From the IMG/VR virus record IMGVR_UViG_3300038424_000251, positions 62,001 through 126,000 of that record: a stretch of DNA of 64,000 nt; one strand, written 5' to 3'. Positions within the stretch are counted from its first letter, which is position 1, and the number at the start of each line of letters is the position of its first letter. This document shows, one piece after another, positions 1,384 to 36,662 of the stretch. Under the pieces are notes generated by a model that made no database searches, had not been told where the DNA came from, and saw only the letters and a program-made list of their open reading frames with translations. Both the position numbers and the translations under genes were made by a program.

Positions 1384-2724
1384 ATGAGTGAAGAATCTTT
1401 TTTCAATTTTGAACCACGGTCTGATGATATCAAGAAGAAAATATCAGAAGAAAGAAAAAAGATGAATGAGCCATTGGGGAAATATGCAAACAATGACATC
1501 GTTAAATCTACAACGGGAGAAGATATTTTTAATTTTGAAAAAAATAAGCAGAAACTTATAGATGATTTGAATTGGTTAAAATCTCTCAAAGTTGAAGAAT
1601 TTACATTTCGTAAAAAATTTGAAGAAATTCAATTGGTAAATGATTTTATTAAAAAATATGATACTAGAGCAAAAGCTAGAATATGGGAACCGACAAATAT
1701 CAATGATGAAGAACTTACCATTAAGGAAATCAACATTCTTCAACCGAAAGTAATTGTTGTTGTTGATGAATTTCAAGAACGGCTTTGGACTACTTTGAGA
1801 ATTTATTGCAGCACAGCAGAATATAACCAAGCACCCGGACGATTCATAAAATTCCTAATGATAGATAATATATCAAATCAAGTGTTGGGTATAGCTTCTA
1901 TTGCTAGTGATGTTATTTCTATATCTGCCAGAGATAAATTTATTGGTTGGACATCAGAAGATAAATTACAACACAAAATGTTGAAATATTCTGCTATAGG
2001 AACTACTATTGTTCCTACACAGCCACTTGGAATAAATTTTTTAGGTGGAAAACTTATAGCAGCATTGGTGACTTCTGATGTAGTTAGAAATGAATGGGAA
2101 AATGAAGATTTAGATAAAACAAAATCTAAACCCTGTAAGTTAGTTGGAATGACAACTACCAGCTTATATGGTCGTCCCTCTATGTATGATGCCATGAAAT
2201 GGTGGAAAGGTGTTGGACTTTCAAAGGGTAAAATACCCATTAAACCCTATGAAGATGTTTATAAAGATTGGCATGATTGGTTAAAGCAATATAAAAAAGA
2301 AAAGTATGATGAAGCTATGAAACAGAAAGAAGGCGTATCTGGCCCAGTTACAGGCGCAAAAATGAGAGTATTGTCGATGATATTTGATGCTTGCGACATT
2401 AAGCAATCAGAATATTGCCATGGATATGAAAGAGGTGTTTATTATTCGTGTTTTTATGAAAATACAAAAGAATTTCTCTGTAGAAAAATTACAGAGAATA
2501 AATTAGTTATGAAACCACTATTTAAAGATGGGGTAAAAGCTATTTTGGAATGGTGGCGACCAAAAGCTATACAAAGATATAAAAAATTGAAAGCAGAAGG
2601 AAGATTGAATCCGAACAAACTGTTTTATAATGAAATGGATAGAAATATAGTTTATCCTTCCATGACGGATAAAGAGGCATATAATGAAGTAAAGAAAAAA
2701 TTCTTCATTGATGTAGGCCGATAA
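1384..2724 (+). CDS. DUF4338/DruA-like protein (GNAT/Mom-related fold), long form
   Basis: PGRFIKFL…LGIASIASD…RDKFIGW…IVPTQPLG.NFLGGKLIA…TTSLYG motifs typical of DUF4338. Confidence 0.8.
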   Translation: MSEESFFNFEPRSDDIKKKISEERKKMNEPLGKYANNDIVKSTTGEDIFNFEKNKQKLIDDLNWLKSLKVEEFTFRKKFEEIQLVNDFIKKYDTRAKARIWEPTNINDEELTIKEINILQPKVIVVVDEFQERLWTTLRIYCSTAEYNQAPGRFIKFLMIDNISNQVLGIASIASDVISISARDKFIGWTSEDKLQHKMLKYSAIGTTIVPTQPLGINFLGGKLIAALVTSDVVRNEWENEDLDKTKSKPCKLVGMTTTSLYGRPSMYDAMKWWKGVGLSKGKIPIKPYEDVYKDWHDWLKQYKKEKYDEAMKQKEGVSGPVTGAKMRVLSMIFDACDIKQSEYCHGYERGVYYSCFYENTKEFLCRKITENKLVMKPLFKDGVKAILEWWRPKAIQRYKKLKAEGRLNPNKLFYNEMDRNIVYPSMTDKEAYNEVKKKFFIDVGR

Positions 2725-2735
2725 TAATAAACCCT

Positions 2736-2909
2736 ATGGGAAGAACATACAGAAAAAATGACAGGTGGAAGAAGGACCGAAGGGACCAAAACTTCAAGAA
2801 AAGTAAAAAATTCAAAAAATTTAAAAATGGTAAATTTAAACCATCTAAATTAAATCTGCCAAAAGTAGAAAATGAACTAACCGATACAGATGATTCTATT
2901 GATTCTTAA
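2736..2909 (+). CDS. small highly basic protein (57 aa, MGRTYRKNDRWKKDRR…), not on the ORF track
   Basis: ATG 2736 to TAA 2909 fills the intergenic gap; K/R-rich with acidic tail. Confidence 0.6.
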   Translation: MGRTYRKNDRWKKDRRDQNFKKSKKFKKFKNGKFKPSKLNLPKVENELTDTDDSIDS

Positions 2910-3258
2910 AATTTTAATTTGGATATTACTTTGCGGAATAATATATTATCTACTGTTGCGTATCCAAAAACTAAAAATACGTTTGGATGCGTTCACATAT
3001 GCTACATTGATATCCAATGGAAAAGATTTGAAAAGTATTTGTGACAAATGTAAAAAATATGGATTAACTAGAGATGAAATAGAATCAGTTGTTAGTGTAT
3101 ATAACTTACATACCAATATAAATTCTTTACATAAGAGTCAAAAAGTGTTAGTGTCATCTATTAAAGAGTTATACAGAGTATTAAGAAGGTATGATAAAAA
3201 TTTCAGACGACAAATCAAAATCGACATTGGTAAAGAAACGAGGACGGAAGAAACTTGA
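2890..3258 (+). CDS. hypothetical membrane-anchored protein
   Basis: N-terminal hydrophobic helix. Confidence 0.6.
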   Translation: MILLILKILIWILLCGIIYYLLLRIQKLKIRLDAFTYATLISNGKDLKSICDKCKKYGLTRDEIESVVSVYNLHTNINSLHKSQKVLVSSIKELYRVLRRYDKNFRRQIKIDIGKETRTEET

Positions 3259-3727
3259 AAACCCGACAATAAAAGGAATAGGGTTGTTTGACCATGTTAA
3301 ACATATTCGTTCTATTCAAAACTCCGATTACTTTAAAAGTTTGACTGAATTAGACGTGAAATCGTTTAATCATTTTATGATACTTAAAGCATTAAGTATG
3401 AATCCCGCTCTTTTAGAAGATATTTCTACTTTATTCAGATATTTTGATAAAATACCATCACCACAATTTTATCAACTTCTTATCGGTTTAATTCCTCCAG
3501 ATAAAAGATTTTATCCTTGGGTTAAAGCTAAAAAAGTTCCGTTCAATGTAAAATTGATTGAATTGATATCAATGTATTTTGAAATTTCTCAAAAAGAAGC
3601 TGCAGAATACGCAACGTTGTTATTCTCAACTGATAAAGGTAAAAAAGAATTGGAAAACCTTTGTAGAGCTTATGGATTGACGGATAAGGAAGTTGAAGAA
3701 ATTATGAAAGGATATGATGATGAATAA
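3191..3727 (+). CDS. clamp loader small subunit, T4 gp62-like
   Basis: FNHFMILKALS…QFYQLLIGLIPPDKRFYPWVKAK…LISMYFEISQKEAAEY pattern matches the gp62 family. Confidence 0.75.
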   Translation: MIKISDDKSKSTLVKKRGRKKLENPTIKGIGLFDHVKHIRSIQNSDYFKSLTELDVKSFNHFMILKALSMNPALLEDISTLFRYFDKIPSPQFYQLLIGLIPPDKRFYPWVKAKKVPFNVKLIELISMYFEISQKEAAEYATLLFSTDKGKKELENLCRAYGLTDKEVEEIMKGYDDE

Positions 3728-4133
3728 AAGTATTATAACTAAGAAAATAATAACAGATTCTAAACCAAGTTTTGTAATTAAAGATTCGGGTAATAGGCAA
3801 AAATATATTACTGGTGCTCAAAGAGATACGCAAGAAGGAAAAGGTAGATTTGACCTTCTTCCTGTTCATGCTATAACTAGGCTTGCCCAACATTTTGAAA
3901 ATGGTGCAAAAAAATATGATGCAGATAATTGGAGAAGAGGAATACCTCTTAATCGTTATTTAGATTCTGCTCTTAGACATTTGTTTGAATTTGCTGATGG
4001 CGAAAAGGATGAAGACCATGCTATTGCTGCTGCGTGGAATATTCTTTGTCTTGTAGAAACGGAATATATGATTAAAAAAGGTATTCTCCCAAAAGAATTG
4101 AATACTCTTAGAAAATTACCAAAAGAAAATTAA
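3714..4133 (+). CDS. dATP/dGTP diphosphohydrolase-domain protein (DUF5664)
   Basis: GKGRFDLLP…GAKKYDADNWRRGI…DSALRHL…EDHAIAAAWN. Confidence 0.85.
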   Translation: MMMNKSIITKKIITDSKPSFVIKDSGNRQKYITGAQRDTQEGKGRFDLLPVHAITRLAQHFENGAKKYDADNWRRGIPLNRYLDSALRHLFEFADGEKDEDHAIAAAWNILCLVETEYMIKKGILPKELNTLRKLPKEN

Positions 4134-4136
4134 ATC

Positions 4137-4877
4137 ATGTCTGTTGAAGTTTCTTTTTTTGATATCAAAGTAAAACCTAATTCTCCTGTATATTTGGTGG
4201 AATGTGATTCACCAGAACAAAACAAGATTTTCAGAAATACCATTGATAATTTTCACAGTTATGTAAAATATACCGATTCTCCTACACGAAATCTTAGATG
4301 GTTAGTCTATGAAACAGAGTCAGGCAATCAAATAGGCGCAATTGGGCTATCTTCTGCTACTATTGCTGTATCAATCAGAGATAAATTTATAGGTTGGGAT
4401 AATAAAACCAAAATAAAAAACTTATGTAACTTAGCAAATAATTCACGATTTTGTTTAGCTCAACCTAGGATTTCCATAAAGAATGCTGCATCTTCAACTC
4501 TTAAACAATTGAGGATTGAGGGAGCTAAACGGTGGAAAGAAAAATATGGAGATGAACTTATTTTATTAGAAACTTTTGTTCAACCTGAAAGAGATGAAGA
4601 ATATCAAGGAAACAAAACTCGTCGTGGTTCATGTTATCGTGCTGATAATTGGATGGAGTTAGGTCTTACCAGTGGAAGTTCTTTCAAAAAATGTCCATTA
4701 TTACTATGGCAAAAGGAAACTGGAGAAAGAGGAAGAATTGCAAGAGAGAATCCTAAACTTGCTATGGAAACGTATGGAAATTATGGTGGTAAACAATATA
4801 TTGTAACTCAATCTAAGCAAAAACTAATGTTTATAAAACCCCTAGTTAAAAATTGGAAAAAAAGACTAACCCAATAG
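4137..4877 (+). CDS. DUF4338/DruA-like protein, short form
   Basis: HSY…RNLRWLV…IGAIGLSS…RDKFIGW…ANNSRFC…LETFV…GSCYRADNW. Confidence 0.85.
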   Translation: MSVEVSFFDIKVKPNSPVYLVECDSPEQNKIFRNTIDNFHSYVKYTDSPTRNLRWLVYETESGNQIGAIGLSSATIAVSIRDKFIGWDNKTKIKNLCNLANNSRFCLAQPRISIKNAASSTLKQLRIEGAKRWKEKYGDELILLETFVQPERDEEYQGNKTRRGSCYRADNWMELGLTSGSSFKKCPLLLWQKETGERGRIARENPKLAMETYGNYGGKQYIVTQSKQKLMFIKPLVKNWKKRLTQ

Positions 4878-5617: not shown

Positions 5618-6916
5618 ATGAATCAACGTTCTCCGAAAGACAAAATAAGGGATTTAATATCAGATTTAAAAAAAGATGCATCTATACCTCAATTTTGTTA
5701 TAATATAAATAGCAAAAATGATTCTGTGTATTATGGTGGCCCATTATATGATGACGAAGAATTGACAGAAGCTATATACACATTATTATTTGGAAAGTGG
5801 TTAGTATCAGGTGAAAATGTGAACAAATTTGAGAAAGAGTTTTCTGTTTATATAAATTTAAAATATTCTCTCATGGTAAATTCTGGAAGTTCTGCTAACT
5901 TACTTATTGTTTTAACTCTTAAAAAATATCTCGGATGGAAAGACAATGATGAAATAATAGTATCATCTGTTGGATTTCCTACTACTGTAAATCCAATTAT
6001 TCAATCTAATTTAAAACCTGTCTTTTGTGATATAGAATTAGATACATTGAATTTTGACATAAATGAGATAAAGAAAAAAATAAACAAAAAAACAAAGGCT
6101 ATCATAGTCTCCCCTGTATTGGGAAATCCACCCAATATGACAGAATTGAAATCTTTGTGTAAAAATCATGATATCATAATGATAATGGATGGGTGTGACT
6201 CTTTGGGAAGTAAGTGGGATGATAAACATTTGGCTGAGTATGGTATAATGTCCAGTTGTTCTTTTTATCCAGCACACCATATCACGACAGGAGAAGGAGG
6301 TATGATATCAACCAATAATGAAGAGTTGATTAATTTATCAAGAAGTTTAGCTTGGTGGGGAAGAGGATGTCATTGTGTTGGTCCTGCTAATTTATTAAAA
6401 AATGGAAGTTGTGGAAGTAGATTTTCAAATTGGATACCAGAATTAGACTTTATAACAGACCATAGATATTTTTATCCCAATATAGGATACAATCTAAAAC
6501 CATTAGATTTACAGGGTGCAATTGGATTAGCTCAATTGAAAAAACTAAATTATATACACTCCAAAAGAACAGAATATAAGAATAGAATTCAAAAAATTTT
6601 ATCAAGGGTAAAAAAATTATCATTTCCAAAGCAATATAATAATGCATATGTATCTTGGTTTGGAGTTCCAATAATTTGTGAATCGTCAGGTGTAAAAGAA
6701 AGATTTGTGAAGTATTTGGAATCTAATAGAATACAGACTAGAAATTATTTTGCAGGTAATTTACTTTTGCATCCTGCATATAAGCATTTAGATAACTGGA
6801 AATTGTATCCGAATGCTAATATGGTATTGGAAAAAATATTTTTCATAGGATGTTCTCCAACTATGACAGACAAAAATATAGATTACATTGAAGAAGTAAT
6901 ATCAAAATATGAATAA
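5618..6916 (+). CDS. rfbH: CDP-4-keto-6-deoxyglucose 3-dehydratase (E1, DegT/DnrJ family)
   Basis: VNSGSSAN, SFYPAHHITTGEGG (His in place of the PLP Lys), GRGCHC…SCG Fe-S cysteines, GYNLKPLDLQGA. Confidence 0.85.
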   Translation: MNQRSPKDKIRDLISDLKKDASIPQFCYNINSKNDSVYYGGPLYDDEELTEAIYTLLFGKWLVSGENVNKFEKEFSVYINLKYSLMVNSGSSANLLIVLTLKKYLGWKDNDEIIVSSVGFPTTVNPIIQSNLKPVFCDIELDTLNFDINEIKKKINKKTKAIIVSPVLGNPPNMTELKSLCKNHDIIMIMDGCDSLGSKWDDKHLAEYGIMSSCSFYPAHHITTGEGGMISTNNEELINLSRSLAWWGRGCHCVGPANLLKNGSCGSRFSNWIPELDFITDHRYFYPNIGYNLKPLDLQGAIGLAQLKKLNYIHSKRTEYKNRIQKILSRVKKLSFPKQYNNAYVSWFGVPIICESSGVKERFVKYLESNRIQTRNYFAGNLLLHPAYKHLDNWKLYPNANMVLEKIFFIGCSPTMTDKNIDYIEEVISKYE

Positions 6917-7751
6917 AATAGATTTATTTGGTGGAACAGGTTTTATAGGTTCTCATTTTAAGAAGTTATATGGTGATGATGTGTATGTTCATCCAAGAAA
7001 TTCTGCCAAACCAGTTACAGACAACGTGTTATACATGATAAGTACCACCGACAATTATAATGTATATAGCGACTTGATGGTGGATATTGATACAAATTTG
7101 ACTCACTTATTAAGAGTTTTGGATTATTATAGAGATGATGAATCATTAAGAAAAAATTCTATTTTTAATTTTGTAAGTTCGTGGTTTGTGTATGGAAAAA
7201 TTTATGATTTACCTGCTAAAGAAACGTCTATTTGTAATCCCAAAGGATTTTATTCCATAACTAAAAAATGCGCAGAAGATTTATTAATATCTTTTTGTGA
7301 AACATATGATTTGAAGTACAGAATTTTTAGATTATGTAATGTCTATGGTATAGGTGATAAAGACGTATCGAAAAGAAAAAATGCTTTACAATACTTAATA
7401 AATGAAATAAAAAATAATAGACCTATACAATTATATTATGGTGGGAATTTTATCAGGGATTATATGGATGGAGATGATATTTGTAGAGCTATTAATTTGT
7501 GTATGAACGTTTCTAATGTCAATCAAATCATAAACATAGGAAGCGGAATACCACAAAATTTTGGAGAAATTATACATTCTGTAGTTAAAGAAACCGGTTC
7601 GACCAGTTTAATAACTGCTATAGACCCTTCTGATTTCCACAAGCATGTTCAAGTGAAAGATATGTATTTAGATATTACTAAACTTAAAAATTTGGGATTT
7701 ATACAACAGGTCAAAATATTTGATGGCATTAAAAAGATTTTAAATTCGTAA
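6909..7751 (+). CDS. NAD-dependent epimerase/reductase (nucleotide-sugar SDR)
   Basis: GGTGFIG, YSITK (YxxxK), RLCNVYG, RDY. Confidence 0.85.
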   Translation: MNKIDLFGGTGFIGSHFKKLYGDDVYVHPRNSAKPVTDNVLYMISTTDNYNVYSDLMVDIDTNLTHLLRVLDYYRDDESLRKNSIFNFVSSWFVYGKIYDLPAKETSICNPKGFYSITKKCAEDLLISFCETYDLKYRIFRLCNVYGIGDKDVSKRKNALQYLINEIKNNRPIQLYYGGNFIRDYMDGDDICRAINLCMNVSNVNQIINIGSGIPQNFGEIIHSVVKETGSTSLITAIDPSDFHKHVQVKDMYLDITKLKNLGFIQQVKIFDGIKKILNS

Positions 7752-10765: not shown

Positions 10766-10791
10766 TATAATTTACATTATATAGCATATTT

Positions 10792-12133: not shown

Positions 12134-12143
12134 AAAATATATT

Positions 12144-13395: not shown

Positions 13396-13399
13396 AAAA

Positions 13400-21926: not shown

Positions 21927-21933
21927 GTAACCA

Positions 21934-21961: not shown

Positions 21962-21965
21962 GTTT

Positions 21966-22172
21966 CTATAATTTTATTTCTAAAAGGTCTATGGTTGTAG
22001 ATGATTTATCATATATGATAATAGGTAATTTTTTGTTACTAATTCCTATTTCTTTTGACATTTCATCACCTATTTTATTGGCATATTTTTTATAATCTTC
22101 CTGTTTTCCGAAACGATTACTATCAAGACCTATCAATAAAACCGTCTTAGTTTTGGGTTTTATTTTTTTCAT
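21966..22172 (-). CDS. hypothetical protein
   Basis: 68 aa ORF coupled to the upstream GT. Confidence 0.55.
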   Translation of the reverse strand: MKKIKPKTKTVLLIGLDSNRFGKQEDYKKYANKIGDEMSKEIGISNKKLPIIIYDKSSTTIDLLEIKL

Positions 22173-24531: not shown

Positions 24532-25077
24532 TTATTTTATTCTTTTCGGATAAAGCTTTGGTGGCAACTTATTTCTGAGAGCTTTTATATTACCACGAAG
24601 AATATAAGCGTATTTATGAAATCCTGTTTTGGATTTACCAAGATATATTGCGTTGGTGGCTTGATAAACTGTTCCAATATGACCAGCTTTTTCATTGGCA
24701 TTTGTTATCACCACTTTTACGTTGGGTTCGTCTTGTTTTAGGAGTTTTAGTGTTTGTGCGATAACATAAGATTCCAGATTAGGAATACCAACGTCAGCAA
24801 GATATAATCTTTTCAAATCCAACACTTCTCCCGACATAGCTTCTGGGCTTAGAAATTTTGAAGCAGAATACATTGGAAGTCCATATATAGCCATCCCAAT
24901 TGCCATCTTTTGTTGGCCATGAGGATATTTGTATCTCACGACATATATTCTTTTGACGCGAGCTGGTATAGTATGAAGATAATGTTTCTTAGCTAGTTGT
25001 ATTATTGCTTCCCTTGTAGCAGGAACAACCTCTACTTCATCTTGTAATCCTTCAATAATAAGCTTTTTAAGATTCAT
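24532..25077 (-). CDS. Mom-like (GNAT fold) DNA modification protein
   Basis: KHYL, IGMAIYG.P, LKRLY…PNLES..IAQTLK, GHIGTVYQATN..YLG. Confidence 0.75.
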   Translation of the reverse strand: MNLKKLIIEGLQDEVEVVPATREAIIQLAKKHYLHTIPARVKRIYVVRYKYPHGQQKMAIGMAIYGLPMYSASKFLSPEAMSGEVLDLKRLYLADVGIPNLESYVIAQTLKLLKQDEPNVKVVITNANEKAGHIGTVYQATNAIYLGKSKTGFHKYAYILRGNIKALRNKLPPKLYPKRIK

Positions 25078-28996: not shown

Positions 28997-29299
28997 ATGA
29001 GAATTAGTCAACTCCAATCACTGACACAAGAAGAACTTCAACTTCTTTTTTACATAATAAACGTAATAGAACCATTGACTTCTCCTAAAATAGAAATAGG
29101 TTCTAAAGAAATTTTATGGTTTAAACATGATACGTTAGTTTGGAAACTTTCTAAACAAGAATCAAAATTAACTCCCGAAGGAAAAACTATATTTCAGGGG
29201 TTAATGACTAAACTAAACAAAATAGCAACACAAGAAGCGAAAGAATATTATGAATGTGCCTCAAATTCAACATCTACACAGCCAGAATTTCAATTCTGA
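28997..29299 (+). CDS. hypothetical protein
   Basis: 100 aa ORF at the head of the polymerase operon. Confidence 0.65.
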   Translation: MRISQLQSLTQEELQLLFYIINVIEPLTSPKIEIGSKEILWFKHDTLVWKLSKQESKLTPEGKTIFQGLMTKLNKIATQEAKEYYECASNSTSTQPEFQF

Positions 29300-29588
29300 A
29301 TTCGTAGAATTTGTTTGGCAGTTTCCTGCCAGAGAAGATTTACAAGAACAAGTAATCTTACAAGTTTATAAAAATGGTACCCTATATATCGAAGGCGGTA
29401 TTATCAATGCTGATGGAAATTATACATCAGAACATGCGGAGAGTGATTATGCCGTTTCTGAAATTACTGTAGATTGGCTTAAAAGTACTCAATTTAATTC
29501 ACTCATCAACTATATCAAGAAATTTTTCTCTCTTGAAAAAGAACTTGCCGAATTGGTTGAAGAAACTGTAAAATATTTAAAAGAATAA
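29250..29588 (+). CDS. hypothetical protein
   Basis: 112 aa ORF; TAATG coupling to the polymerase. Confidence 0.65.
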   Translation: MNVPQIQHLHSQNFNSEFVEFVWQFPAREDLQEQVILQVYKNGTLYIEGGIINADGNYTSEHAESDYAVSEITVDWLKSTQFNSLINYIKKFFSLEKELAELVEETVKYLKE

Positions 29589-32185
29589 TGTATCAAAATA
29601 TATACATCAACAGGAAAGATTGGATTGTTCATCTTTGGGATGATATTAAAGGTTATTCATCATTCCCGTATCCAAAATACGCTTATAAAAGACAAGTAGG
29701 TGGACCTGAAAAGTCAATATATGGTGATGAATTAGTAAAAGTATTTGATTATAAAGACAATGACACAGAGTTATTTGAGTCAGATGTTCCAGCAGAAACA
29801 AGAGTTCTTATGGATACTTACTCCGATTCAGATGAACCATCAATAGGTCATAGGGTGGGTGTAATTGATATTGAAGTATCAACAGAGGGTGGATTTCCAA
29901 ATATAGAAACTGCTGATAAAAAGATTACTGCTATTTCATTGTTTGATTATTTAACTAAAACTTGTTGTATATTTGTTCTTGATAAAGACCATAAAATTGA
30001 CAATAAAGAAGAGGAAGTTGACCCGTGGTTGCCAAAAGATTGGAAAATTACAACAGAAGAAATACAAAAAATAAAAATTGTTGTACGGTCATATGACGAT
30101 GAAGACAATCTTTTAATAGATTTCGTGGATAAATGGCAAGAATGTGCATTTACCATTGTTACAGGTTGGAATGTAGATTATTTTGACCTCCCTTATTTGT
30201 ATCTCCGATTAAAAAATTGTCTTGGTATAAAAGCAGCTAAATGTTTATCGCCCACTGGTGCAGCATATGTAAATGGTTTTACCAAAAAACTAACGCTTGG
30301 TGGTATATCGGTTCTTGATTATATCCTACTATATAAGAAGTTTTCTGGAAAGATGGAACCAACTTATGCTTTAGGTCCTATTGGTTTAAAAACTGTTGGT
30401 ATCGGTAAAATTCAATATCACGGTAATTTAGACGATTTATACAAATCAGATATAAACAAATTTTTAGAATATAACATGACCGATGTTAAAATTATTGTTG
30501 CATTGGATAAAAAACTTAAATTTATTGATTTAGCTAGAAATATTTGTCATGTAGGCCACGTTCCATATGATAATTTTCATATGTCATCACGATATCTTGA
30601 TGGAGCTACATTGATTTATTTGAAACGAAATGGCGGTCTTATTTCTCCAAATAAACCAGCAGAGGGAAAAGAAGAATATACTGAAAGGTTGGAAGAAGGA
30701 GAAGAAGGATTTTCTGGTGCATTTGTCAAGGAGCCCGTGCCGGGAAGATATAATTGGGTTTTTGACCTTGATTTAACTTCAATGTATCCCAATATTATTA
30801 TTTCCCTGAATATATCTCCAGAAACGAAAGTAGGTAAAATAGAAAATTATTCACTCGAAAAGCGTATAAAAGGAGAGACTACAATGTATGAAATTGGTCA
30901 AACAAATTATACACCTGATGAGTTTGAAGAGTTGGTTGAAAAATCAAATTATTCTATTAGTTCTAACGGTATATTATATCGTACAGATAAAGCCGGTGTA
31001 ATTCCTACTCTTTTGTCGTTATGGTTTCAACAGCGCAAGAATATGAGGAAAAAAGCTGCTGAATTCAAAAAAGCTGGTGATATGGAACAATATAATTTCT
31101 ACAACCAACGTCAAGCGGTTTGGAAAATTTTACTCAATTCATTTTACGGAGTATTAGGGTTGCCTTTATTCCGATTTTATGATGTGGATAATGCTGAAGC
31201 AGTAACTACTACAGGTGTAGATATTATTCAAACTACTGCCAAGGCAATTAACATCTATTACAAACAAGCATTGGAAACTGATGAAGATGGTGATTGGGTT
31301 ATTTATAGTGATACCGATTCGTGTTTTGTTGATTCAATTCCCATTATTAAAAAGAGATTTCCAGATATAGATTTGAATAATGAAGATGAAATGACTAAAG
31401 CCATTATGAGCGTGACTACGGAAGTTCAGAGTTATGTGAATCAATTTTATCATGTGATGGCTAAAAAATTCTTCAATTTAAATAAACACACATTTGATGC
31501 TAAGCAGGAAGTAATTAGTAAATCATCGTTTTGGCTTGCTAAGAAACGATATGCGCAATGGATTATTCATGAAGAAGGTGCCTTATTAAAACAACCAAGA
31601 TTGGAAGTAAAAGGTATCGACGTTGTCCGAACATCATTTCCAGCTTCATTTCGGACATTTATGGATTCTTTCTTGAGAAAATTATTGACTGCAGCTCCAA
31701 AAAAGGAACTTGATGATATGATTCTCAAATTCAGAGAAGATATAAAAACACTTGATGTTCTTGATATTGCAAAAAATACTTCTGTAAAATTTGTAAGTCA
31801 GGACGGTGTTCATAACTATAATCCAGATAATAGAAGGCCTCTTCAATTTGTCAAAGGAACGCCGGCACAAGTAAAAGCATGCTTAGCTTACAATGATTTG
31901 TTAATTAAAATGAAGTTAGAAAAACAATTTGAACCAATTCATCATGGTCAGAAAATCAAATGGGTATATTTACAAGATAATCAATATAACTTAGATGCTT
32001 TAGCTTTAAAAGGTGATGGAAATGACCCCGATGAAATATTGGAAATAGTTAATCGGTTAGTTGATAGGAAGAAAATGTTCGAACAGGAATTAAAGAGTAA
32101 ACTAATAGATTTTTACAATGTATTTAAGTGGACATTTCCAAATTCGTCAATGGAAACTGCAAGCCAATTTTTTGATTTTTCTTAA
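29588..32185 (+). CDS. family B DNA polymerase (T4 gp43-like)
   Basis: ExoI DIEV, ExoII GWNVDYFD, ExoIII YNMTD; DLTSMYP, KILLNSFYG, YSDTDS, KKRY. Confidence 0.97.
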   Translation: MYQNIYINRKDWIVHLWDDIKGYSSFPYPKYAYKRQVGGPEKSIYGDELVKVFDYKDNDTELFESDVPAETRVLMDTYSDSDEPSIGHRVGVIDIEVSTEGGFPNIETADKKITAISLFDYLTKTCCIFVLDKDHKIDNKEEEVDPWLPKDWKITTEEIQKIKIVVRSYDDEDNLLIDFVDKWQECAFTIVTGWNVDYFDLPYLYLRLKNCLGIKAAKCLSPTGAAYVNGFTKKLTLGGISVLDYILLYKKFSGKMEPTYALGPIGLKTVGIGKIQYHGNLDDLYKSDINKFLEYNMTDVKIIVALDKKLKFIDLARNICHVGHVPYDNFHMSSRYLDGATLIYLKRNGGLISPNKPAEGKEEYTERLEEGEEGFSGAFVKEPVPGRYNWVFDLDLTSMYPNIIISLNISPETKVGKIENYSLEKRIKGETTMYEIGQTNYTPDEFEELVEKSNYSISSNGILYRTDKAGVIPTLLSLWFQQRKNMRKKAAEFKKAGDMEQYNFYNQRQAVWKILLNSFYGVLGLPLFRFYDVDNAEAVTTTGVDIIQTTAKAINIYYKQALETDEDGDWVIYSDTDSCFVDSIPIIKKRFPDIDLNNEDEMTKAIMSVTTEVQSYVNQFYHVMAKKFFNLNKHTFDAKQEVISKSSFWLAKKRYAQWIIHEEGALLKQPRLEVKGIDVVRTSFPASFRTFMDSFLRKLLTAAPKKELDDMILKFREDIKTLDVLDIAKNTSVKFVSQDGVHNYNPDNRRPLQFVKGTPAQVKACLAYNDLLIKMKLEKQFEPIHHGQKIKWVYLQDNQYNLDALALKGDGNDPDEILEIVNRLVDRKKMFEQELKSKLIDFYNVFKWTFPNSSMETASQFFDFS

Positions 32186-32289: not shown

Positions 32290-33012
32290 ATGAATTATCC
32301 AACTGAAAAAGAACTCAAAGACTTACTAGAATCAGACCTAGAACTTAATGCTATTGCTCAATCAGGCCCTTCTCTTGAAAAGGGACATCATGTTGCTCCA
32401 GAGGTTGAAAGAATTGTCCGTGAAAAATTGTATAATGCTTATGGGGGCAAATATGAAGAATTTATTGACATATATAAAATAGGTCCCAATAAAGGCCAAC
32501 CAAAACCTAAGAAGCAAGGAAAGGGAGTTAGAAAGGAACCAGATTACAAACTAAAAGATTTTCCTGACCAACCGGGTAATGTAAAAGCAGCATGTGTGTC
32601 TGAAAAAGATGGTGGACCTAATCTTTCATCTCTCTCTAAATACGCTACCCAATATATCGATGGTCAAATAAAAGCTTATTGGTTTCTTATTGTCAATTTA
32701 ATAGATGGTAAAGTTTCTGTCAACTTTCATGAATTGTTTAGTGAACTTCTTCCAGTTTGCCGATTTGATTTTGGTCATGGACAATTAATGCTTGATAAAA
32801 GTAGATATTACAAATGGTTAAAAGAACCAAATCATACAAAACTTTCGCCAACAGAATCTATTGATTATTTATTGGAACTTATATCCAAACCAAAAAGAGA
32901 AAAATTTTACGAAAAAAGAGAAAAGAAATATTCCAAACTTGAAGAGAATTTACTTAAGAAAAAATTGGCGTTGAAACCTTCTTATGAGAACACGGAAGCA
33001 CCAAAGGAATAA
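32290..33012 (+). CDS. putative type II restriction endonuclease
   Basis: EPDY…GNVK PD-(D/E)XK-like pattern; overlaps the MTase gene. Confidence 0.55.
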   Translation: MNYPTEKELKDLLESDLELNAIAQSGPSLEKGHHVAPEVERIVREKLYNAYGGKYEEFIDIYKIGPNKGQPKPKKQGKGVRKEPDYKLKDFPDQPGNVKAACVSEKDGGPNLSSLSKYATQYIDGQIKAYWFLIVNLIDGKVSVNFHELFSELLPVCRFDFGHGQLMLDKSRYYKWLKEPNHTKLSPTESIDYLLELISKPKREKFYEKREKKYSKLEENLLKKKLALKPSYENTEAPKE

Positions 33013-34594
33013 TAAACGTCAAATGGGTCAATTTATGACCCCCAGATTATTGGCACAGAAAGTAATAGGAAATGACATTAAGAAAGAAGAGAATATTTTA
33101 GAGCCATCTTTCGGTGATGGCTCTTTTATTATAGAGATAGCAAAAAAATTGATGCCCATATATGACTATAATCTGGATAATGTATTTGACCACATATACG
33201 GCATAGAATTAGACCCAATTCTTTATAACAAGTGTTTACTGAATATAAAAAAAGAATTTGGTAAAATACCTGAAAAACACCATCTTATTAATGAGGATTT
33301 TTTACTGCATAATTTTGATGGAATATTTTTCAAACATATTTTGGGAAATCCACCGTTTGGGGGAACTATACCAATTAAATATCAAAATAAATTAGAAGAA
33401 TTATATGGTAAAAGATATGGAAAAACTATAAAAAGAGAAAGTTATTCATATTTTTTAGTAAAAAGTGTAGGAATGTTGGAAGTAGAAGGAAAATTATCAT
33501 TTATATGTAGTGATACTTTTCTTACAATAAAAACCATGTGCGGATTACGGAATTTTTTAATGCAAGAAGGACTTGTGTCAATCAAAGAATTGCCTGAATT
33601 TTCAGAGGAAACCAATTATGGCATGGTAATTATTGATTTCATAAAATCAAATAAAAAAGAATCTAACTATATTGAAGTCTTTGGACAAAAAATCTTCAAA
33701 AAGGATATGGAAAAAATAGGGAATTTGTCTTGGGGAAATGTTAATGAATACATGAAATATTTTATAGGCCCTCATTTATCAACTTATATTATTTGTAGTA
33801 GTGGGATGACTATAGGAAAAAATGAATATTTTGTCAGAGAAATAGTTGATGATAAAATAATAGAGCCATACAACTTTACATTTTATAATAAACCGATTAC
33901 ATTAAAAGATGAATTGAATAGAGCACATTTTAATAAGTTATCAGAATCACAAAAAGTAAAAATCACACACAAAGAACAAATGGGAGAAACAAAAAAAGAT
34001 GTCAAAATTGAACCTTTAACAGTACCTGAATCAATAATGATTCCAAATGATTACTATAAATATTATAATAAAATGGTCCCCGGTGATGTATATGTAGAAC
34101 CAAAATATGTAATTTATTGGAGAAATGATGGTGAAGCGGTTAAAATGTTTAAAAAAAATGGAAATTGGTATCTTCATGGTATAGGGGGATTGCCCTTCTT
34201 TGGAAGAGAAGGAATTACATGGAATCTAATAGGTTCTAAAATCAACCCAAGATATTTGCCAAAAGGTTATATTTTGGATAGTGGGTGCCCATGTGGATTT
34301 CTGAAAAATGGTGTTGAAAAAGACGAATTATTCTTTATTATGGGGTGGCTTTTAACTTCCATGGCAAATGATATTCTCAAAAATGTTATAAATCATACCA
34401 GAAATATTCAGGGAAAAGATGTTGAAAAACTTCCATATCCTATATGGGTTTCAGATTCTACAAAACATAAAATAATAGATTATGTTAAGTCGATTATTGA
34501 TTTAAAGAAAAATGGAACTCCGTTGGAAAATAGTTATGTTGAAGTTCTAACAGAGTTATTTGATTTTCAGATTGAAAAAAGTGGTGTTGACTAA
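32984..34594 (+). CDS. amino (N6-adenine-type) DNA methyltransferase, gamma class (TaqI/Eco57I-like)
   Basis: GQFMTP, LEPSFGDGSF, YGIELD, GNPPF, C-terminal TRD. Confidence 0.9.
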   Translation: MRTRKHQRNNKRQMGQFMTPRLLAQKVIGNDIKKEENILEPSFGDGSFIIEIAKKLMPIYDYNLDNVFDHIYGIELDPILYNKCLLNIKKEFGKIPEKHHLINEDFLLHNFDGIFFKHILGNPPFGGTIPIKYQNKLEELYGKRYGKTIKRESYSYFLVKSVGMLEVEGKLSFICSDTFLTIKTMCGLRNFLMQEGLVSIKELPEFSEETNYGMVIIDFIKSNKKESNYIEVFGQKIFKKDMEKIGNLSWGNVNEYMKYFIGPHLSTYIICSSGMTIGKNEYFVREIVDDKIIEPYNFTFYNKPITLKDELNRAHFNKLSESQKVKITHKEQMGETKKDVKIEPLTVPESIMIPNDYYKYYNKMVPGDVYVEPKYVIYWRNDGEAVKMFKKNGNWYLHGIGGLPFFGREGITWNLIGSKINPRYLPKGYILDSGCPCGFLKNGVEKDELFFIMGWLLTSMANDILKNVINHTRNIQGKDVEKLPYPIWVSDSTKHKIIDYVKSIIDLKKNGTPLENSYVEVLTELFDFQIEKSGVD

Positions 34595-35150: not shown

Positions 35151-35152
35151 TT

Positions 35153-35638
35153 ATGTCAGATAAAATTTTCAATTTTGATGACCAATTAAAAATCGGTAAC
35201 AATGGAGAAACCGATTTTATGAGGATTTATGAAAAGCTTGAACCTAAAAAAAGTTTAGATAATTTTCGTATTGACTTTCTTCTTAATAATGGTAAGACTA
35301 TAGAATTAAAGACTGATAATTATGACATGAATAAAACCCCAAATTTTTTCATGGAACAATATACAGTTTCAGGAAATAAAAGTGATTTGGGTGGTCCTTG
35401 GCGTTCAAAAGAACATAACGTTGATTATTTTGTTTATTATTTTATTAAAAATAAAGTATTCTTTTGGTTTGACCCTGTTTCATTGTGTGAATGTTTGGAT
35501 AAGTTCATAAGAGAAAATGAACTCAAACAAATTTCAATACCAAATGTAGATAAGAATGGTGGATGTTATAAAGCGTTGGGATTTAAGATTCCAAGAGATA
35601 GTTTAAAATCTGTTCTTCTTAAAGAACATAAAATATGA
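35153..35638 (+). CDS. PD-(D/E)XK nuclease-like protein
   Basis: GE..F, IDF…TIELKTD…NFFME, GGPW, DYFVYYF. Confidence 0.7.
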   Translation: MSDKIFNFDDQLKIGNNGETDFMRIYEKLEPKKSLDNFRIDFLLNNGKTIELKTDNYDMNKTPNFFMEQYTVSGNKSDLGGPWRSKEHNVDYFVYYFIKNKVFFWFDPVSLCECLDKFIRENELKQISIPNVDKNGGCYKALGFKIPRDSLKSVLLKEHKI

Positions 35639-35868
35639 AAATAAAAAGTAAAAAATTAAGTAAAATTGAAAAAGAAATTGGTAAATGTATGGAAAAGTAT
35701 ATAGGAGAGCCTATAGATGATATCACTTTGTCAAAAATTGAAAAATCAGTCCAAAAATTAATAAATAATTGTTTTCCAAATCAATATAAAGTTATAATGG
35801 ACAGGTCAAATAATTCTCCAAAAAATATAGACAATCAAATTTTAAATATTGACCTAATTTTAAAATGA
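35635..35868 (+). CDS. mini-protein resembling the contractile tail sheath C-terminal domain
   Basis: IGEPIDDIT…YKVIMDRSNNSPKNIDNQILNIDLILK compared with the sheath consensus FEPND..T…V.CDE.NNTP..ID.N.L..DI. Confidence 0.55.
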   Translation: MKIKSKKLSKIEKEIGKCMEKYIGEPIDDITLSKIEKSVQKLINNCFPNQYKVIMDRSNNSPKNIDNQILNIDLILK

Positions 35869-36662
35869 AGTTTGATTACACAATCAAAGAAGTAAATAAA
35901 TTTACCGCAGCTAAATTAGTTCAACAACATCACTATTCCAAGGTAATGCCTAAACTTACCAAGCATTATCTTGGTGTATTTATTGGTGATAAGATGGTTG
36001 GTGTACTAACTCTTGGATGGGGAACGCAACCCCGCCAAACTATCAATAAACTTTTTCCCGGTCTTACAACCAAGGACTATTATGAAATTGGTAAGATGTG
36101 TATGCTTCCTGAAATGCCCAAAAATTCTGAATCACAAATGTTATCTGCAATTATCAAATGGATAAAAATACATTTGCCAGAAAAGCTATTTCTATATACA
36201 TGGGCTGATGGTATTGTTGGTAAAGTTGGTTATGTGTATCAATCAGCAAATTTCTATTATGGTGGTTTCATTTGGACGGATATTTATATTAGCCCTGATG
36301 GGGAGAAAATTCATCCAAGAACCTCACATAATCTTTGTATAGAGAATGCTAAGTTTTGTAATAAAGAAAAGATATTCTGGTTGACCCGAGATTTTATGAA
36401 ATTGAAAGGAATCACTAGAATAAGAGGAAAACAATTCAGATATATTATGCCTTTATCTAAAATGGCTAGAAAAATGCTTGACAAATCTACTGTTAGATGG
36501 ACAATAGATTATCCTAAAGAAGAAGATTTAGAATGGAAAAAACAAATTGATGGTGGTTATGAACTAATTAAAGAATTGCCAAAAATTGATTTGGGAATGG
36601 TCAATATAAATAAAAAGAATGTCAATTCTTATAAAAGGGAAGAAAATCAATTTTTTGGATAA
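35865..36662 (+). CDS. Mom-like (GNAT fold) DNA modification protein
   Basis: HHYS, VGVLTLG, EIGKMC…PKNSESQMLS, TWAD….GYVYQSANFYYGG. Confidence 0.8.
   Translation: MKFDYTIKEVNKFTAAKLVQQHHYSKVMPKLTKHYLGVFIGDKMVGVLTLGWGTQPRQTINKLFPGLTTKDYYEIGKMCMLPEMPKNSESQMLSAIIKWIKIHLPEKLFLYTWADGIVGKVGYVYQSANFYYGGFIWTDIYISPDGEKIHPRTSHNLCIENAKFCNKEKIFWLTRDFMKLKGITRIRGKQFRYIMPLSKMARKMLDKSTVRWTIDYPKEEDLEWKKQIDGGYELIKELPKIDLGMVNINKKNVNSYKREENQFFG

What the first reader, a model, noticed from the sequence alone, without database searches (positions are those of the whole stretch)
1384..36662. Candidate clamp-tethered GNAT DNA-modification system: DruA-like and Mom-like enzymes share the polymerase's terminal peptide
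Seen: the polymerase ends in SQFFDFS*. The Mom-like protein 35865-36662 ends in ENQFFG*. The two DUF4338/DruA-like proteins begin MSEESFFNFE (1384) and MSVEVSFFDI (4137). Looser matches occur at the macro-domain C-terminus (TLDSFI*), the R-M fusion C-terminus (LDLTDFM*), the MTase tail (ELFDF) and the nuclease N-terminus (KIFNF). Established: T4-type polymerases dock on the gp45 clamp through a short hydrophobic C-terminal peptide, and Mu Mom is a GNAT-fold adenine-modifying enzyme. DUF4338 and Mom share HY/HS and G..Y.A.N(W/F) motifs, visible here in the short DruA-like and both Mom-like proteins. Inference: the phage loads several base-modifying and DNA-protecting enzymes onto its own sliding clamp to modify DNA during replication. 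This would also give stand-alone phage DruA a biochemical role.
Basis: partly seen in the sequence, partly recalled or inferred. Interest (0 to 1): 0.85.

Follow-up and report, generated by a model that had tools for sequence, protein, structure and literature searches.

The report
Clamp-docking peptides on phage DNA-modifying enzymes
In this jumbo phage, several enzymes that modify or repair DNA carry at one end the same short peptide that the DNA polymerase probably uses to hold the sliding clamp, which suggests, without yet proving, that they travel on the clamp during replication.

Summary
The domain calls hold: two DruA/DUF4338 proteins, a Mom-family protein, PolB and a macro domain. ORF 38026-38778 is a sliding clamp (AF2 pLDDT 96.5, PCNA fold, profile hits only gp45 clamps).

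The terminal peptides are not chance:
- Aromatic-acidic peptides are kept in about 80% of 119 homologs of each DruA protein and 48% of 120 Mom homologs, while the adjacent linkers vary.
- They are missing from Mom homologs of two phages of other types, one of them Mu-like.
- Their flavour follows the polymerase tail of the same genome in five genomes of two lineages (Melnitz: pol TTLEDFFG*, Mom ATLEGFF*).
- The Mom gene lies directly after PolB in three related contigs.
- DruA-like genes lie beside clamp-loader genes in this clade and in cyanophages.

The macro protein is DarG-like and has a conserved TLDxF tail. The clamp loader and a 100-aa protein carry similar peptides.

Still unproven:
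- Physical binding to the clamp.
- DruA-Mom/GNAT homology (hhalign E 0.1-0.24).
- The methyltransferase tails.

T4 alpha-glucosyltransferase-gp45 binding and the N-terminal PIP box of T4 RNase H are precedents, so this is a new variant of a known principle.

The parts
1384..2724 (+). Long DruA/DUF4338-like protein (446 aa). It has an N-terminal SFFNFE (nt 1396-1413) and a second copy, DIFNFE (nt 1522-1539).
   Evidence: Pfam DruA 5.6e-26. PADLOC DruA 5.6e-24. The N-terminal aromatic-acidic motif is present in 78% of 119 homologs against 11% of interior windows.
3191..3727 (+). gp62-like small subunit of the clamp loader. It lies between the two DruA-like genes.
   Evidence: Pfam Phage_clamp_A 1.9e-6. 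PHROG 225 'clamp loader of DNA polymerase' 4.4e-15. The same DruA/gp62 neighbourhood occurs in L031, in a third contig, and in cyanophages S-SSM7 and S-CAM9.
3714..4133 (+). MazZ-like protein with the N-terminal domain of dATP/dGTP diphosphohydrolase. Listed as context only.
   Evidence: Pfam dGTP_diPhyd_N 1.5e-23.
4137..4877 (+). Short DruA/DUF4338-like protein (246 aa) with an N-terminal SFFDI (nt 4152-4166).
   Evidence: Pfam DruA 1.9e-22. FF lies in the first 20 aa in 68% of 119 homologs against 0% of interior windows; the relaxed motif is present in 81%. In the Atlas structural search, run on the model of the closest Atlas cluster (a viral DruA protein of 237 aa, not this protein), bacterial DruA-domain models align from residue 10-11 of that model, so the peptide is probably an add-on.
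24532..25077 (-). Second Mom-like protein (181 aa). It has no terminal motif.
   Evidence: Pfam Mom 1.3e-23. Local HMM 7e-9. Termini.
28997..29299 (+). 100-aa protein of unknown fold with a conserved C-terminal QPEFQF* (nt 29279-29296).
   Evidence: The tail Q[SP][EN]F[QS]F* is kept in orthologs of 50-73% identity while the preceding residues vary. It is absent in L026 and L027. No family was found.
29588..32185 (+). Family-B DNA polymerase, gp43-like, with the C-terminal tail QFFDFS* (nt 32165-32182).
   Evidence: Pfam DNA_pol_B 8.3e-37. The tail [QNEK]FF[DEN]F is kept in relatives down to 44% identity, including Microcystis phage Mel-JY01 (KFFNFK*). Compare RB69 gp43 ...ASLFDMFDF* and T4 ...SLDFLFG*.
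32984..34594 (+). N6-adenine methyltransferase (Eco57I/type IIG-like) with ELFDF 9 residues from its end.
   Evidence: Pfam Eco57I and N6_Mtase. PADLOC MTase_II/PglX. Only identical orthologs were found, so conservation could not be tested.
35153..35638 (+). 161-aa protein, possibly of the PD-(D/E)XK fold, with an N-terminal KIFNFDDQ (nt 35162-35185).
   Evidence: [IV]FNF[DN]DQ is kept in orthologs of 68-76% identity. The fold lead comes only from Atlas structural neighbours (PDDEXK_5, TM 0.53).
35865..36662 (+). Mom-family DNA modification enzyme (265 aa) with the C-terminal tail NQFFG* (nt 36645-36659).
   Evidence: Pfam Mom 3.5e-54. The xFFG* tail is invariant in orthologs from related loci. 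Aromatic tails follow a variable linker in 57 of 120 homologs.
37003..37548 (+). DarG-like macro-domain protein (181 aa from the ATG) with the C-terminal tail TLDSFI* (nt 37528-37545).
   Evidence: Pfam Macro 1.8e-8. PADLOC DarG 7.5e-34. The tail TL[DE]xF[ILMFA] is kept in all 8 distinct orthologs. Macro proteins of phage isolates match only the core.
38026..38778 (+). Sliding clamp subunit (PCNA/gp45-like, 250 aa). It is the proposed docking platform.
   Evidence: AF2 with a 134-sequence alignment gives pLDDT 96.5 and pTM 0.92. Foldseek against the PDB gives PCNA with probability 1.00 and TM 0.73. The sequence profile against the PDB hits only phage clamps: RB69 gp45 at 2.4e-4 and T4 gp45 at 0.025. 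The gene lies immediately upstream of the clamp loader.
38972..39955 (+). gp44-like AAA+ large subunit of the clamp loader, with N-terminal MDFLVE.
   Evidence: Pfam AAA and DNA_pol3_delta2. The N-terminus is MDF[LVIM][VI]E in close relatives, and MNDFFEDES or MNNFFEDDS in L026 and L027.
60631..62883 (-). 750-aa methyltransferase fusion ending LDLTDFM*.
   Evidence: Pfam N6_Mtase 9.1e-7. Only 100% identical copies were retrieved, so conservation could not be tested.

Best explanation
The window comes from a jumbo phage; an identical stretch lies on a 365-kb contig. It has a T4-type replisome: a family-B polymerase, a PCNA/gp45-like clamp, and a gp44/gp62-like clamp loader.

The polymerase ends in a short aromatic-acidic peptide (QFFDF) of the kind that T4 and RB69 gp43 use to dock in the hydrophobic pocket of the clamp. 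The same kind of peptide has been added, through a short variable linker, to one extreme end of several enzymes that act on DNA:
- a Mom-family base-modifying enzyme (C-terminus);
- two DruA/DUF4338-like proteins (N-terminus);
- a DarG-like macro domain, which would remove ADP-ribose from DNA (C-terminus);
- probably a small PD-(D/E)XK-like protein (N-terminus) and a 100-aa protein of unknown function (C-terminus).

The most likely mechanism is that these proteins compete for the three peptide-binding pockets of the trimeric clamp. They are thereby concentrated on newly replicated DNA, so that modification and repair of the phage genome are coupled to replication.

Shown here: the motifs, their conservation, their co-variation with the polymerase tail, the gene neighbourhoods, and the identity of the clamp.

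Inferred: that the peptides bind the clamp, and what chemistry the Mom-like and DruA-like enzymes perform.
For: 1. The clamp is real, and the clamp-loader subunits are present.

2. The motif is terminal and conserved while the flanks vary:
- Short DruA homologs have FF in the first 20 aa in 68%, against 0% of interior windows.
- Long DruA homologs have it in 63%, against 1.8%.
- Mom homologs have FF in the last 10 aa in 37%, against 0.6% (alignments).

3. The peptide is an add-on. Mom homologs of 48-50% identity in the Mu-like Psychrobacter phage Y8A and in an Edwardsiella phage stop at the core (...HNFQKY*). In the Atlas structural search, run on the model of the closest Atlas cluster, bacterial DruA-domain models align only from residue 10-11. 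Macro homologs in isolates lack the tail region.

4. The Mom tail follows the polymerase tail of the same genome:
- window: pol QFFDFS, Mom NQFFG;
- L026: pol NFFEF, Mom KQFFDY;
- L027: pol EFFDF, Mom EQFFDYEKQ;
- L028, a classic T4-like contig: pol NLEAFFS, Mom SLYKFFE;
- Melnitz: pol TTLEDFFG, Mom ATLEGFF.

5. Gene neighbourhood. The Mom gene lies directly downstream of PolB in L026-L028. The DruA-like gene lies next to gp62 in this window and in two other metagenomic clades, and between gp44 and gp62 in cyanophages S-SSM7 and S-CAM9.

6. A protein that must touch the clamp, the gp44-like loader subunit, carries the same N-terminal peptide (MNDFFEDES, MNNFFEDDS, MDFLVE).

7. Precedents. The C-terminal PIP peptide of T4/RB69 gp43 and the N-terminal PIP peptide of T4 RNase H bind gp45 in a hydrophobic pocket flanked by basic residues (PMC3012046). 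T4 alpha-glucosyltransferase co-purifies with gp45 (PMC13216743).
Against:
- The motif is only 3-5 residues long and was defined after seeing the data. The genome is AT-rich, though F is only 4.7% of residues.
- About half of the listed Mom homologs lack a clear tail. One subfamily ends ...NVNAHKK*.
- The second Mom-like protein of the window has no motif.
- DruA-like proteins of cultured cyanophages and pelagiphages do not show a clean FF[DE] N-terminus, although they lie next to clamp-loader genes.
- The peptides do not fit the canonical PIP box Qxx[LIM]xx[FY][FY].
- The co-variation rests on two lineages, so on few independent events.
Confidence: 0.6

Rival explanations
1. The peptides are real interaction motifs but dock on a different replisome hub, not the clamp. 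Candidates are the gp44/gp62 clamp loader, the single-strand-binding protein, or the polymerase itself, as with the acidic tails ending in F of T7 gp2.5 and gp4, which bind T7 polymerase.
For: DruA-like genes are linked specifically to clamp-loader genes, not to the clamp gene. The motifs are aromatic and acidic, like other replisome tails; the T7 case is from my own knowledge. No binding partner was tested.
Against: The polymerase carries the same peptide at the position where T4-type polymerases carry their clamp-binding tail. The Mom tail copies the polymerase tail of its own genome. The clamp loader also has the motif, which fits a shared target, the clamp, better than the loader being the target.
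Confidence: 0.15
2. The terminal peptides serve some purpose other than tethering to the replisome. They could be a packaging or capsid-targeting signal, like the N-terminal targeting sequences of T4 internal proteins, so that the enzymes are injected with the DNA. They could be a degradation signal. Or they could be a structural element of each fold.
For: The N-terminal location in both DruA-likes and in the small nuclease-like protein fits this. In one Mom subfamily the FF[DE] pattern lies in what is probably the first beta-strand (MKYFFDIKEI), which shows that such patterns can be structural.
Against: The same motif is on the polymerase and the clamp loader, which are not expected to be packaged. 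The peptides sit beyond variable-length linkers outside the conserved cores. The C-terminal and N-terminal versions share one sequence pattern. The tails are absent from core-only homologs that are otherwise intact.
Confidence: 0.12
3. It is coincidence. Short F-rich strings appear by chance in an AT-rich phage proteome and were picked out after the fact.
For: FF is not rare: it occurs 39 times in 20,185 residues, and 2.5 terminal cases are expected by chance. The looser matches may well be chance. ELFDF in the methyltransferase is not terminal, and LDLTDFM* and ELFDF could not be tested for conservation.
Against: For the polymerase, Mom, both DruA-likes and the macro protein, the motif is kept across 50-85% identical homologs while neighbouring residues and linker lengths change. 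It also tracks the polymerase tail between lineages.
Confidence: 0.05

Closest known systems
Clamp-binding (PIP-like) peptides of T4/RB69: the gp43 C-terminus, the gp55 C-terminus and the RNase H N-terminus on the gp45 clamp
   Same: These are short hydrophobic or aromatic peptides with acidic residues at an extreme terminus, on proteins that work on DNA behind the clamp. T4 gp43 ends ...SLDFLFG*, gp55 ends ...SLDFLYEAND* and RB69 gp43 ends ...ASLFDMFDF*. Both C-terminal and N-terminal placement are known (PMC3012046).
   Different: Here the carriers are base-modifying or DNA-repair enzymes (Mom-like, DruA-like, DarG-like macro), not core replication or transcription factors. Binding has not been shown. 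The local consensus is FF[DE]F, xFFG or TLDxF.
T4 alpha-glucosyltransferase binding to gp45 (Sommer et al. 2004; confirmed in PMC13216743)
   Same: A phage DNA-modifying enzyme is physically associated with the phage's own sliding clamp, and was proposed to modify DNA together with replication.
   Different: The enzyme class is different: a glycosyltransferase acting on hmC. No terminal peptide was mapped in the text I read. The 2026 paper attributes most of the alpha/beta ratio to expression and activity rather than to clamp affinity.
Eukaryotic PCNA clients with terminal PIP boxes (DNMT1, UNG2, DNA ligase I)
   Same: Maintenance-modification and repair enzymes are recruited to new DNA by a short aromatic peptide. 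DNA ligase I and UNG2 carry it at the N-terminus, ending in ...SFF. This is from my own knowledge and was not tested here.
   Different: The eukaryotic motif is the canonical Qxx[LIM]xx[FY][FY], which the phage peptides do not match. There is no evolutionary link.
Phage Mu Mom (N6-carbamoylmethyl-adenine modification)
   Same: Same Pfam family: 184 bits, with 29% identity to Mu Mom by tblastn.
   Different: Mu Mom ends ...VQPYPK*, has no aromatic tail and is regulated by Com. The protein here has an extra C-terminal subdomain plus a linker and FFG tail, and sits in a replication module.
DruA of the type I Druantia defence system
   Same: DruA/DUF4338 domain: Pfam 80-92 bits, with PADLOC DruA hits.
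   Different: There are no DruB-E partners. The genes are phage-encoded and stand alone, next to clamp-loader genes, and the proteins carry an N-terminal peptide that probably lies outside the conserved DruA fold (the Atlas structural matches, made on a related viral model, start at residue 10-11). DruA-like proteins in Synechococcus phages were noted before, but only as structural look-alikes (10.1101/2025.08.05.668817).
Phage orphan DarG-like macrodomains (AdfM of chimalliviruses, PMC13309987)
   Same: A stand-alone macro domain related to DarG and encoded by a large phage.
   Different: AdfM is delivered to DNA by import into the phage nucleus. Here a conserved TLDxF tail suggests delivery by the clamp. 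Activity was not tested.

Membership tests
Sliding clamp (PCNA / T4 gp45 family), for ORF 38026-38778 | Two-domain processivity fold | tested here: met
   AF2 pLDDT 96.5 and pTM 0.92. Foldseek top hits are PCNA, probability 1.00, TM 0.73.
Sliding clamp (PCNA / T4 gp45 family), for ORF 38026-38778 | Sequence relationship to known phage clamps | tested here: met
   The family profile hits only RB69 gp45 (2.4e-4), T4 gp45 (0.025) and one further phage clamp in the PDB. The single sequence finds nothing.
Sliding clamp (PCNA / T4 gp45 family), for ORF 38026-38778 | Forms a closed trimeric ring that is loaded by an AAA+ loader | not testable with these tools
   Only context is available. The gp44-like gene lies directly downstream, and a gp62-like gene is at 3191-3727.
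Clamp-binding peptide clients (T4-type or PIP-like) | Short aromatic or hydrophobic peptide at an extreme terminus, outside the folded core | tested here: met
Clamp-binding peptide clients (T4-type or PIP-like) | Canonical PIP box Qxx[LIM]xx[FY][FY] | tested here: not met
   None of QFFDFS, NQFFG, SFFDI, SFFNFE or TLDSFI has the canonical spacing. T4 (SLDFLFG) and RB69 (SLFDMFDF) do not fit it strictly either.
Clamp-binding peptide clients (T4-type or PIP-like) | Conservation of the peptide in homologs and resemblance to the polymerase tail of the same genome | tested here: met
   for conservation. for five polymerase/Mom pairs.
Clamp-binding peptide clients (T4-type or PIP-like) | Physical binding to the clamp pocket | not testable with these tools
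Mom family (PF25680), for ORF 35865-36662 | Profile match above the curated cutoff over the whole domain | tested here: met
   184 bits against a cutoff of 27.1, covering profile positions 2-194 of 202. PHROG 1384 'Mom-like DNA modification protein' 1.7e-38.
Mom family (PF25680), for ORF 35865-36662 | Makes N6-carbamoylmethyl-adenine in DNA | not testable with these tools
   Needs nucleoside LC-MS.
Druantia type I system, for the DruA-like ORFs | DruA/DUF4338 domain | tested here: met
   Pfam 91.8 and 80.2 bits against a cutoff of 27. PADLOC DruA 5.6e-24 and 1.2e-7.
Druantia type I system, for the DruA-like ORFs | Operon with DruB, DruC, DruD and the DruE helicase | tested here: not met
   The neighbours are a gp62-like clamp-loader subunit, a MazZ-like protein and sugar-biosynthesis genes. 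So the proteins belong to the domain family but are not part of a Druantia system.
GNAT/Mom-like fold, for the DruA-like proteins | Significant profile-profile or structural similarity to Mom or GNAT | tested here: inconclusive
   hhalign gives E 0.24, 0.23 and 0.095, with probability below 1%. There are no Pfam cross-hits at E<=10. In favour: a collinear alignment of 4-5 motif blocks, Atlas DruA clusters in which 12-15% of members also carry PF25680, and a GNAT-phage-like neighbour at 0.87.
DarG antitoxin, for ORF 37003-37548 | DarG-type macro domain | tested here: met
   PADLOC DarG 7.5e-34, covering profile positions 8-118 of 329. Pfam Macro 1.8e-8.
DarG antitoxin, for ORF 37003-37548 | C-terminal DarT-binding domain and an adjacent darT gene | tested here: not met
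   The protein is 181 aa and matches only the macro part. Its neighbours are a 105-aa ORF and a 140-aa YopX-like ORF. It is therefore an orphan macro domain.

The most novel reading that the evidence does not exclude
Phage DruA/DUF4338 proteins are distant Mom-like acyltransferase-fold enzymes that modify DNA bases co-replicationally while held on the phage clamp or clamp loader. They include the 'T4-like gene cluster 1216' protein, which cyanophages keep between gp44 and gp62. By extension, bacterial DruA in type I Druantia, and the DruA domains fused to DDE transposases, would mark or read DNA by the same chemistry. That would give Druantia type I a modification-based component for telling self from non-self.
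Probability: 0.2. Interest if true: 0.85.

Novelty: new variant of a known kind. Interest (0 to 1): 0.66.

Why it matters
Sliding clamps are known tool-belts for replication, repair and, in T4, late transcription. One phage DNA-modifying enzyme, T4 alpha-glucosyltransferase, is known to bind gp45.

If the peptides found here do bind the clamp, then a broad set of marine and freshwater T4-type and jumbo phages couple anti-restriction base modification (Mom-like), reversal of DNA ADP-ribosylation (DarG-like macro) and the unknown DruA activity directly to the replication fork.

This gives three things:
- The first testable biochemical handle on phage DruA-like proteins, and indirectly on Druantia DruA.
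- A simple sequence rule, matching the polymerase tail, for finding further clamp clients in phage genomes.
- An explanation for how newly made phage DNA could be protected before host nucleases or DarT reach it.

The DruA/clamp-loader gene linkage in cyanophages is a solid comparative observation whatever the peptide turns out to do.

Tried and rejected
- A single-sequence AF2 model of the clamp failed (pLDDT 37). It was rescued with a 134-sequence alignment.
- Single-sequence Pfam, PHROG, PDB and tblastn searches did not identify the clamp.
- The DruA-versus-Mom profile comparison was run three ways, including broadened alignments. It was never significant. Pfam at E<=10 gave no cross-hits.
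- I tried to collect more polymerase/Mom tail pairs for the ...FWR and tail-less Mom subfamilies (P0035, P0062). The polymerase was not within 10 kb.
- I tried to pair DruA N-termini with polymerase tails in other clades (P0324, P0349, P0343, plus one contig-walking step). No polymerase lay in reach, and one contig had no DNA.
- Homologs of the 750-aa methyltransferase fusion were sought, but only identical copies came back. The same was true of the 536-aa methyltransferase.
- I looked for other known clamp partners (RNase H, ligase, gp55/gp33-like) in the rest of the window. None was identified.
- I rejected the reading that this is a Druantia-like defence system carried by the phage, because the partner genes are absent.
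- I rejected pure chance for the core set, because of conservation and co-variation.

Full report
**What is in the window.** The window is AT-rich (31% G+C) phage DNA. An identical stretch lies on a 365-kb IMG/VR contig (L005). The nearest cultured relative by polymerase is Microcystis phage Mel-JY01, at 44% identity.

The quoted termini are all present at the stated coordinates:
- PolB 29588-32185 ends ASQFFDFS*.
- The Mom-like protein 35865-36662 ends ENQFFG*.
- The two DruA-like proteins begin MSEESFFNFE and MSVEVSFFDI.
- The macro protein ends TLDSFI*.
- The 161-aa ORF begins MSDKIFNF.
- The 536-aa methyltransferase has ELFDF, 9 residues from its end.
- The 750-aa methyltransferase fusion on the minus strand ends LDLTDFM*.

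Pfam confirms DruA (91.8 and 80.2 bits against a cutoff of 27), Mom (184 bits), DNA_pol_B and Macro. A second Mom-like protein at 24532-25077(-) scores 84 bits and has no terminal motif.

**The clamp.** ORF 38026-38778 had no Pfam, PHROG or PDB sequence hit, and a single-sequence AF2 model failed. An exhaustive representative search gave 699 relatives. A 134-sequence alignment (A1) gave an AF2 model with pLDDT 96.5 and pTM 0.92. Its best PDB matches are PCNA rings, with probability 1.00 and TM 0.73. The family profile hits only three PDB sequences, all phage clamps: RB69 gp45 at 2.4e-4, T4 gp45 at 0.025, and 6drt. The gene lies directly upstream of a gp44-like AAA+ clamp-loader subunit. A gp62-like small subunit is at 3191-3727 (Pfam Phage_clamp_A, PHROG 225). 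The phage therefore has a T4-type replisome.

**Chance within the window.** F makes up 4.7% of residues. FF lies within 10 residues of a terminus six times, against 2.5 expected among 79 ORFs. A pattern taken from the polymerase tail, FF[DEN] followed by a hydrophobic residue, occurs four times in 20,185 residues. Three of those lie within 12 residues of a terminus (binomial p=0.003). This is suggestive, but the pattern was chosen post hoc.

- *Short DruA-like.* Among 119 homologs of 59-77% identity, FF lies in the first 20 residues in 68%, against 0% of interior windows of the same size. A relaxed aromatic-acidic pattern is present in 81%, against 9%. In the alignment the S-F-F-[DE]-hydrophobic columns stand out. 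They sit between a leader of variable length and a variable linker of about 8 residues, ahead of the conserved core. In the Atlas structural search, run on the model of the closest Atlas cluster rather than this protein, bacterial DruA-domain models align only from residue 10-11. The peptide therefore looks like a phage-specific add-on.
- *Long DruA-like.* Among 119 homologs of 52-79% identity, FF is N-terminal in 63% (against 1.8%) and the relaxed pattern in 78%. The window protein has two copies, SFFNFE at residues 5-10 and DIFNFE at residues 47-52. Shorter homologs carry them side by side, as in PFFDTDDFDFE.
- *Mom-like.* Orthologs in related loci all end xFFG*. Across 120 homologs, 57 have an aromatic pair after a linker of 5-30 variable residues, in several flavours: xFFG, QFFDY, LEQFF, FWR, TLExFF. 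A large subfamily stops at ...NVNAHKK*.
- *Polymerase.* The tail [QNEK]FF[DEN]F is kept down to Mel-JY01 (KFFNFK*).
- *Macro protein.* The tail TL[DE]xF[ILMFA] is kept in all distinct orthologs.
- *161-aa protein.* It keeps [IV]FNF[DN]DQ in relatives of 68-76% identity.

**Evidence that points to the clamp in particular.**

1. *Reference tails fetched here.* T4 gp43 ends SLDFLFG*, T4 gp55 ends SLDFLYEAND* and RB69 gp43 ends ASLFDMFDF*. The T4 replication review states three things. The gp43 C-terminal PIP peptide and the RNase H N-terminal PIP peptide both bind gp45. The RB69 peptide sits in a hydrophobic pocket. Two basic residues there contact the peptide's acidic groups (PMC3012046). That fits an aromatic-acidic motif at either terminus.

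2. *The Mom tail copies the polymerase tail of its own genome.*
   - Window: pol QFFDFS, Mom NQFFG.
   - L026: pol NFFEF, Mom KQFFDY.
   - L027: pol EFFDF, Mom EQFFDYEKQ.
   - L028, a classic T4-like contig with gp45, gp44, gp62 and regA: pol NLEAFFS, Mom SLYKFFE.
   - Cultured Methylophilales phage Melnitz: pol TTLEDFFG, Mom ATLEGFF.
   
   Cyanophage S-SSM7 gp43 ends NTLESFFS*. This is the same TLExFF flavour as the Melnitz Mom tail and the macro tail of the window.

3. *Homologs in other phage types lack the tail.* Mom homologs of 48-50% identity in the Mu-like Psychrobacter phage Y8A and in an Edwardsiella phage end at the core boundary (...HNFQKY*). Mu Mom ends ...VQPYPK*. I did not check whether the Edwardsiella phage encodes a clamp.

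4. *Gene neighbourhood.* The Mom gene directly follows PolB in L026-L028. It is 3.7 kb downstream of PolB in the window. The long DruA-like gene is followed within 0.5-2.7 kb by a gp62-like gene in the window, in L031 and in a third contig. In cyanophages S-SSM7 and S-CAM9 the DruA-like gene lies between gp44 and gp62.

5. *The clamp loader carries the motif.* The gp44-like subunit begins MDFLVE, with MDF[LVIM][VI]E in close relatives and MNDFFEDES or MNNFFEDDS in L026 and L027.

6. *A direct precedent.* T4 alpha-glucosyltransferase co-purifies with gp45 and beta-glucosyltransferase does not (Sommer 2004, reproduced in PMC13216743).

**What is not supported.**
A greedy hhalign alignment is collinear over about 180 columns. 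But the scores are not significant: E 0.24, 0.23 and 0.095, with probability below 1%. Pfam gives no cross-hits. The only outside hints are Atlas DruA clusters in which 12-15% of members also match PF25680, and a GNAT-phage-like neighbour at 0.87. I call this inconclusive.
- *Methyltransferase tails.* They could not be tested, because only identical copies exist in the viral collection.
- *Cultured cyanophage and pelagiphage DruA-likes.* These have different N-termini...VYAADKFI[ND]YFSN, MTYSW...DDQWQSW and ...LLEKQWETF.
- *No single locus.* The genes do not form one locus. A cluster of sugar-nucleotide, glycosyltransferase and radical-SAM genes at 5.6-23.7 kb lies between the DruA genes and the Mom gene.
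- *No Druantia partners.* These proteins are members of the DruA domain family but not of a Druantia system.

**Additional finding.** The macro protein matches the PADLOC DarG model at 7.5e-34 over the macro part only. Orphan DarG-like macrodomains are known phage counter-defences: AdfM is imported into the chimallivirus nucleus (PMC13309987). Neither of the two papers I searched, that one and PMC11825919 on T4-like phage antitoxin-like enzymes, mentions a clamp. Macro homologs in phage isolates match only the core, residues 1-122. The linker and TLDxF tail are therefore specific to this lineage.

**Verdict.** The best explanation, at about 0.6, is that these are clamp-interaction peptides that place DNA-modifying and DNA-repair enzymes on the phage's own sliding clamp. 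Shown here are the motifs, their conservation, their co-variation, the gene context and the identity of the clamp. Inferred are the binding and the chemistry. Because T4 supplies precedents for each element, I rate it a new variant of a known kind. Its real value lies in giving phage DruA-like proteins a testable role.

Noticed in passing
window 37003-37548 (+): The macro-domain protein matches the PADLOC DarG model at 7.5e-34 over the macro part only, and there is no darT gene nearby. It is a candidate orphan anti-DarT enzyme of the AdfM type. Its conserved C-terminal TLDxF tail is absent from macro homologs in phage isolates.
   Followed up: partly
window 28997-29299 (+): A 100-aa protein of unknown fold lies just upstream of PolB. 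Its C-terminal Q[SP][EN]F[QS]F* is conserved in the window's clade while the preceding residues vary. The tail is absent from the L026 and L027 orthologs. It may be another clamp partner, by analogy with gp33; that analogy is speculative.
   Followed up: partly
window 38972-38989 (+); L026:13595-14566; L027:14170-15141: The gp44-like clamp-loader subunit starts with the same aromatic-acidic peptide: MDFLVE in the window, and MNDFFEDES or MNNFFEDDS in L026 and L027.
   Followed up: partly
P0045-P0120 (Mom homologs); L029:10001-10786: The Mom subfamily that lacks the C-terminal tail (...NVNAHKK*) always begins MKYFF[DEN]I (33 of 120). Tail-bearing proteins never do. It is one clade, so this may be a single event. 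It is unclear whether the motif moved to the N-terminus.
   Followed up: partly
window 5618-23671, both strands: A large cluster encodes a DegT-type aminotransferase, an epimerase/dehydratase, GT2, GT7 and GT1 (GT4-conflict) glycosyltransferases and two radical-SAM enzymes, one of which gave a sub-threshold match to a B12-binding domain (23.3 bits against a cutoff of 32.1). In L026 and L027 the GT1 homolog sits beside dUTPase/DCD and the replication genes. The cluster may glycosylate DNA or a surface structure.
   Followed up: no
window 3714-4133 (+) and 40553-41092 (+): A protein with the MazZ-like N-terminal domain of dATP/dGTP diphosphohydrolase and a nucleoside 2-deoxyribosyltransferase-like protein both lie in the replication modules. 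They hint at manipulation of the nucleotide pool or at non-canonical bases.
   Followed up: no
L021:1420-2571, L022:1240-2382 (cyanophages S-CAM9, S-SSM7): In T4-like cyanophages the DruA-like gene ('T4-like GC 1216, putative cytoplasmic protein') is inserted between the clamp-loader genes gp44 and gp62.
   Followed up: yes
L016:10001-13773: In one relative the PolB match spans 3.7 kb instead of 2.6 kb. The first ORF stops after 427 aa, and a YopX-like ORF, homologous to window 37545-37967, lies inside the span. The polymerase gene appears to be interrupted by a mobile insertion.
   Followed up: no
window 62911-63736 (-): An AAA_33 kinase lies next to a cREC_REC (cyclic-phosphate processing receiver) domain protein. 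This may be an RNA-repair or signalling pair.
   Followed up: no
window 39964-40212 and 40240-40521 (+): Two adjacent small ORFs have near-identical C-termini (...ALEIFIRSNQA* and ...ALEIIARSHQG*), which suggests a tandem duplication. Their function is unknown.
   Followed up: no
Protein-atlas search result for window 4137-4877: In bacteria the DruA domain is often fused to DDE transposases (IS4, IS701, IS66, Tn5-like). That points to a role directed at DNA for the domain.
   Followed up: no
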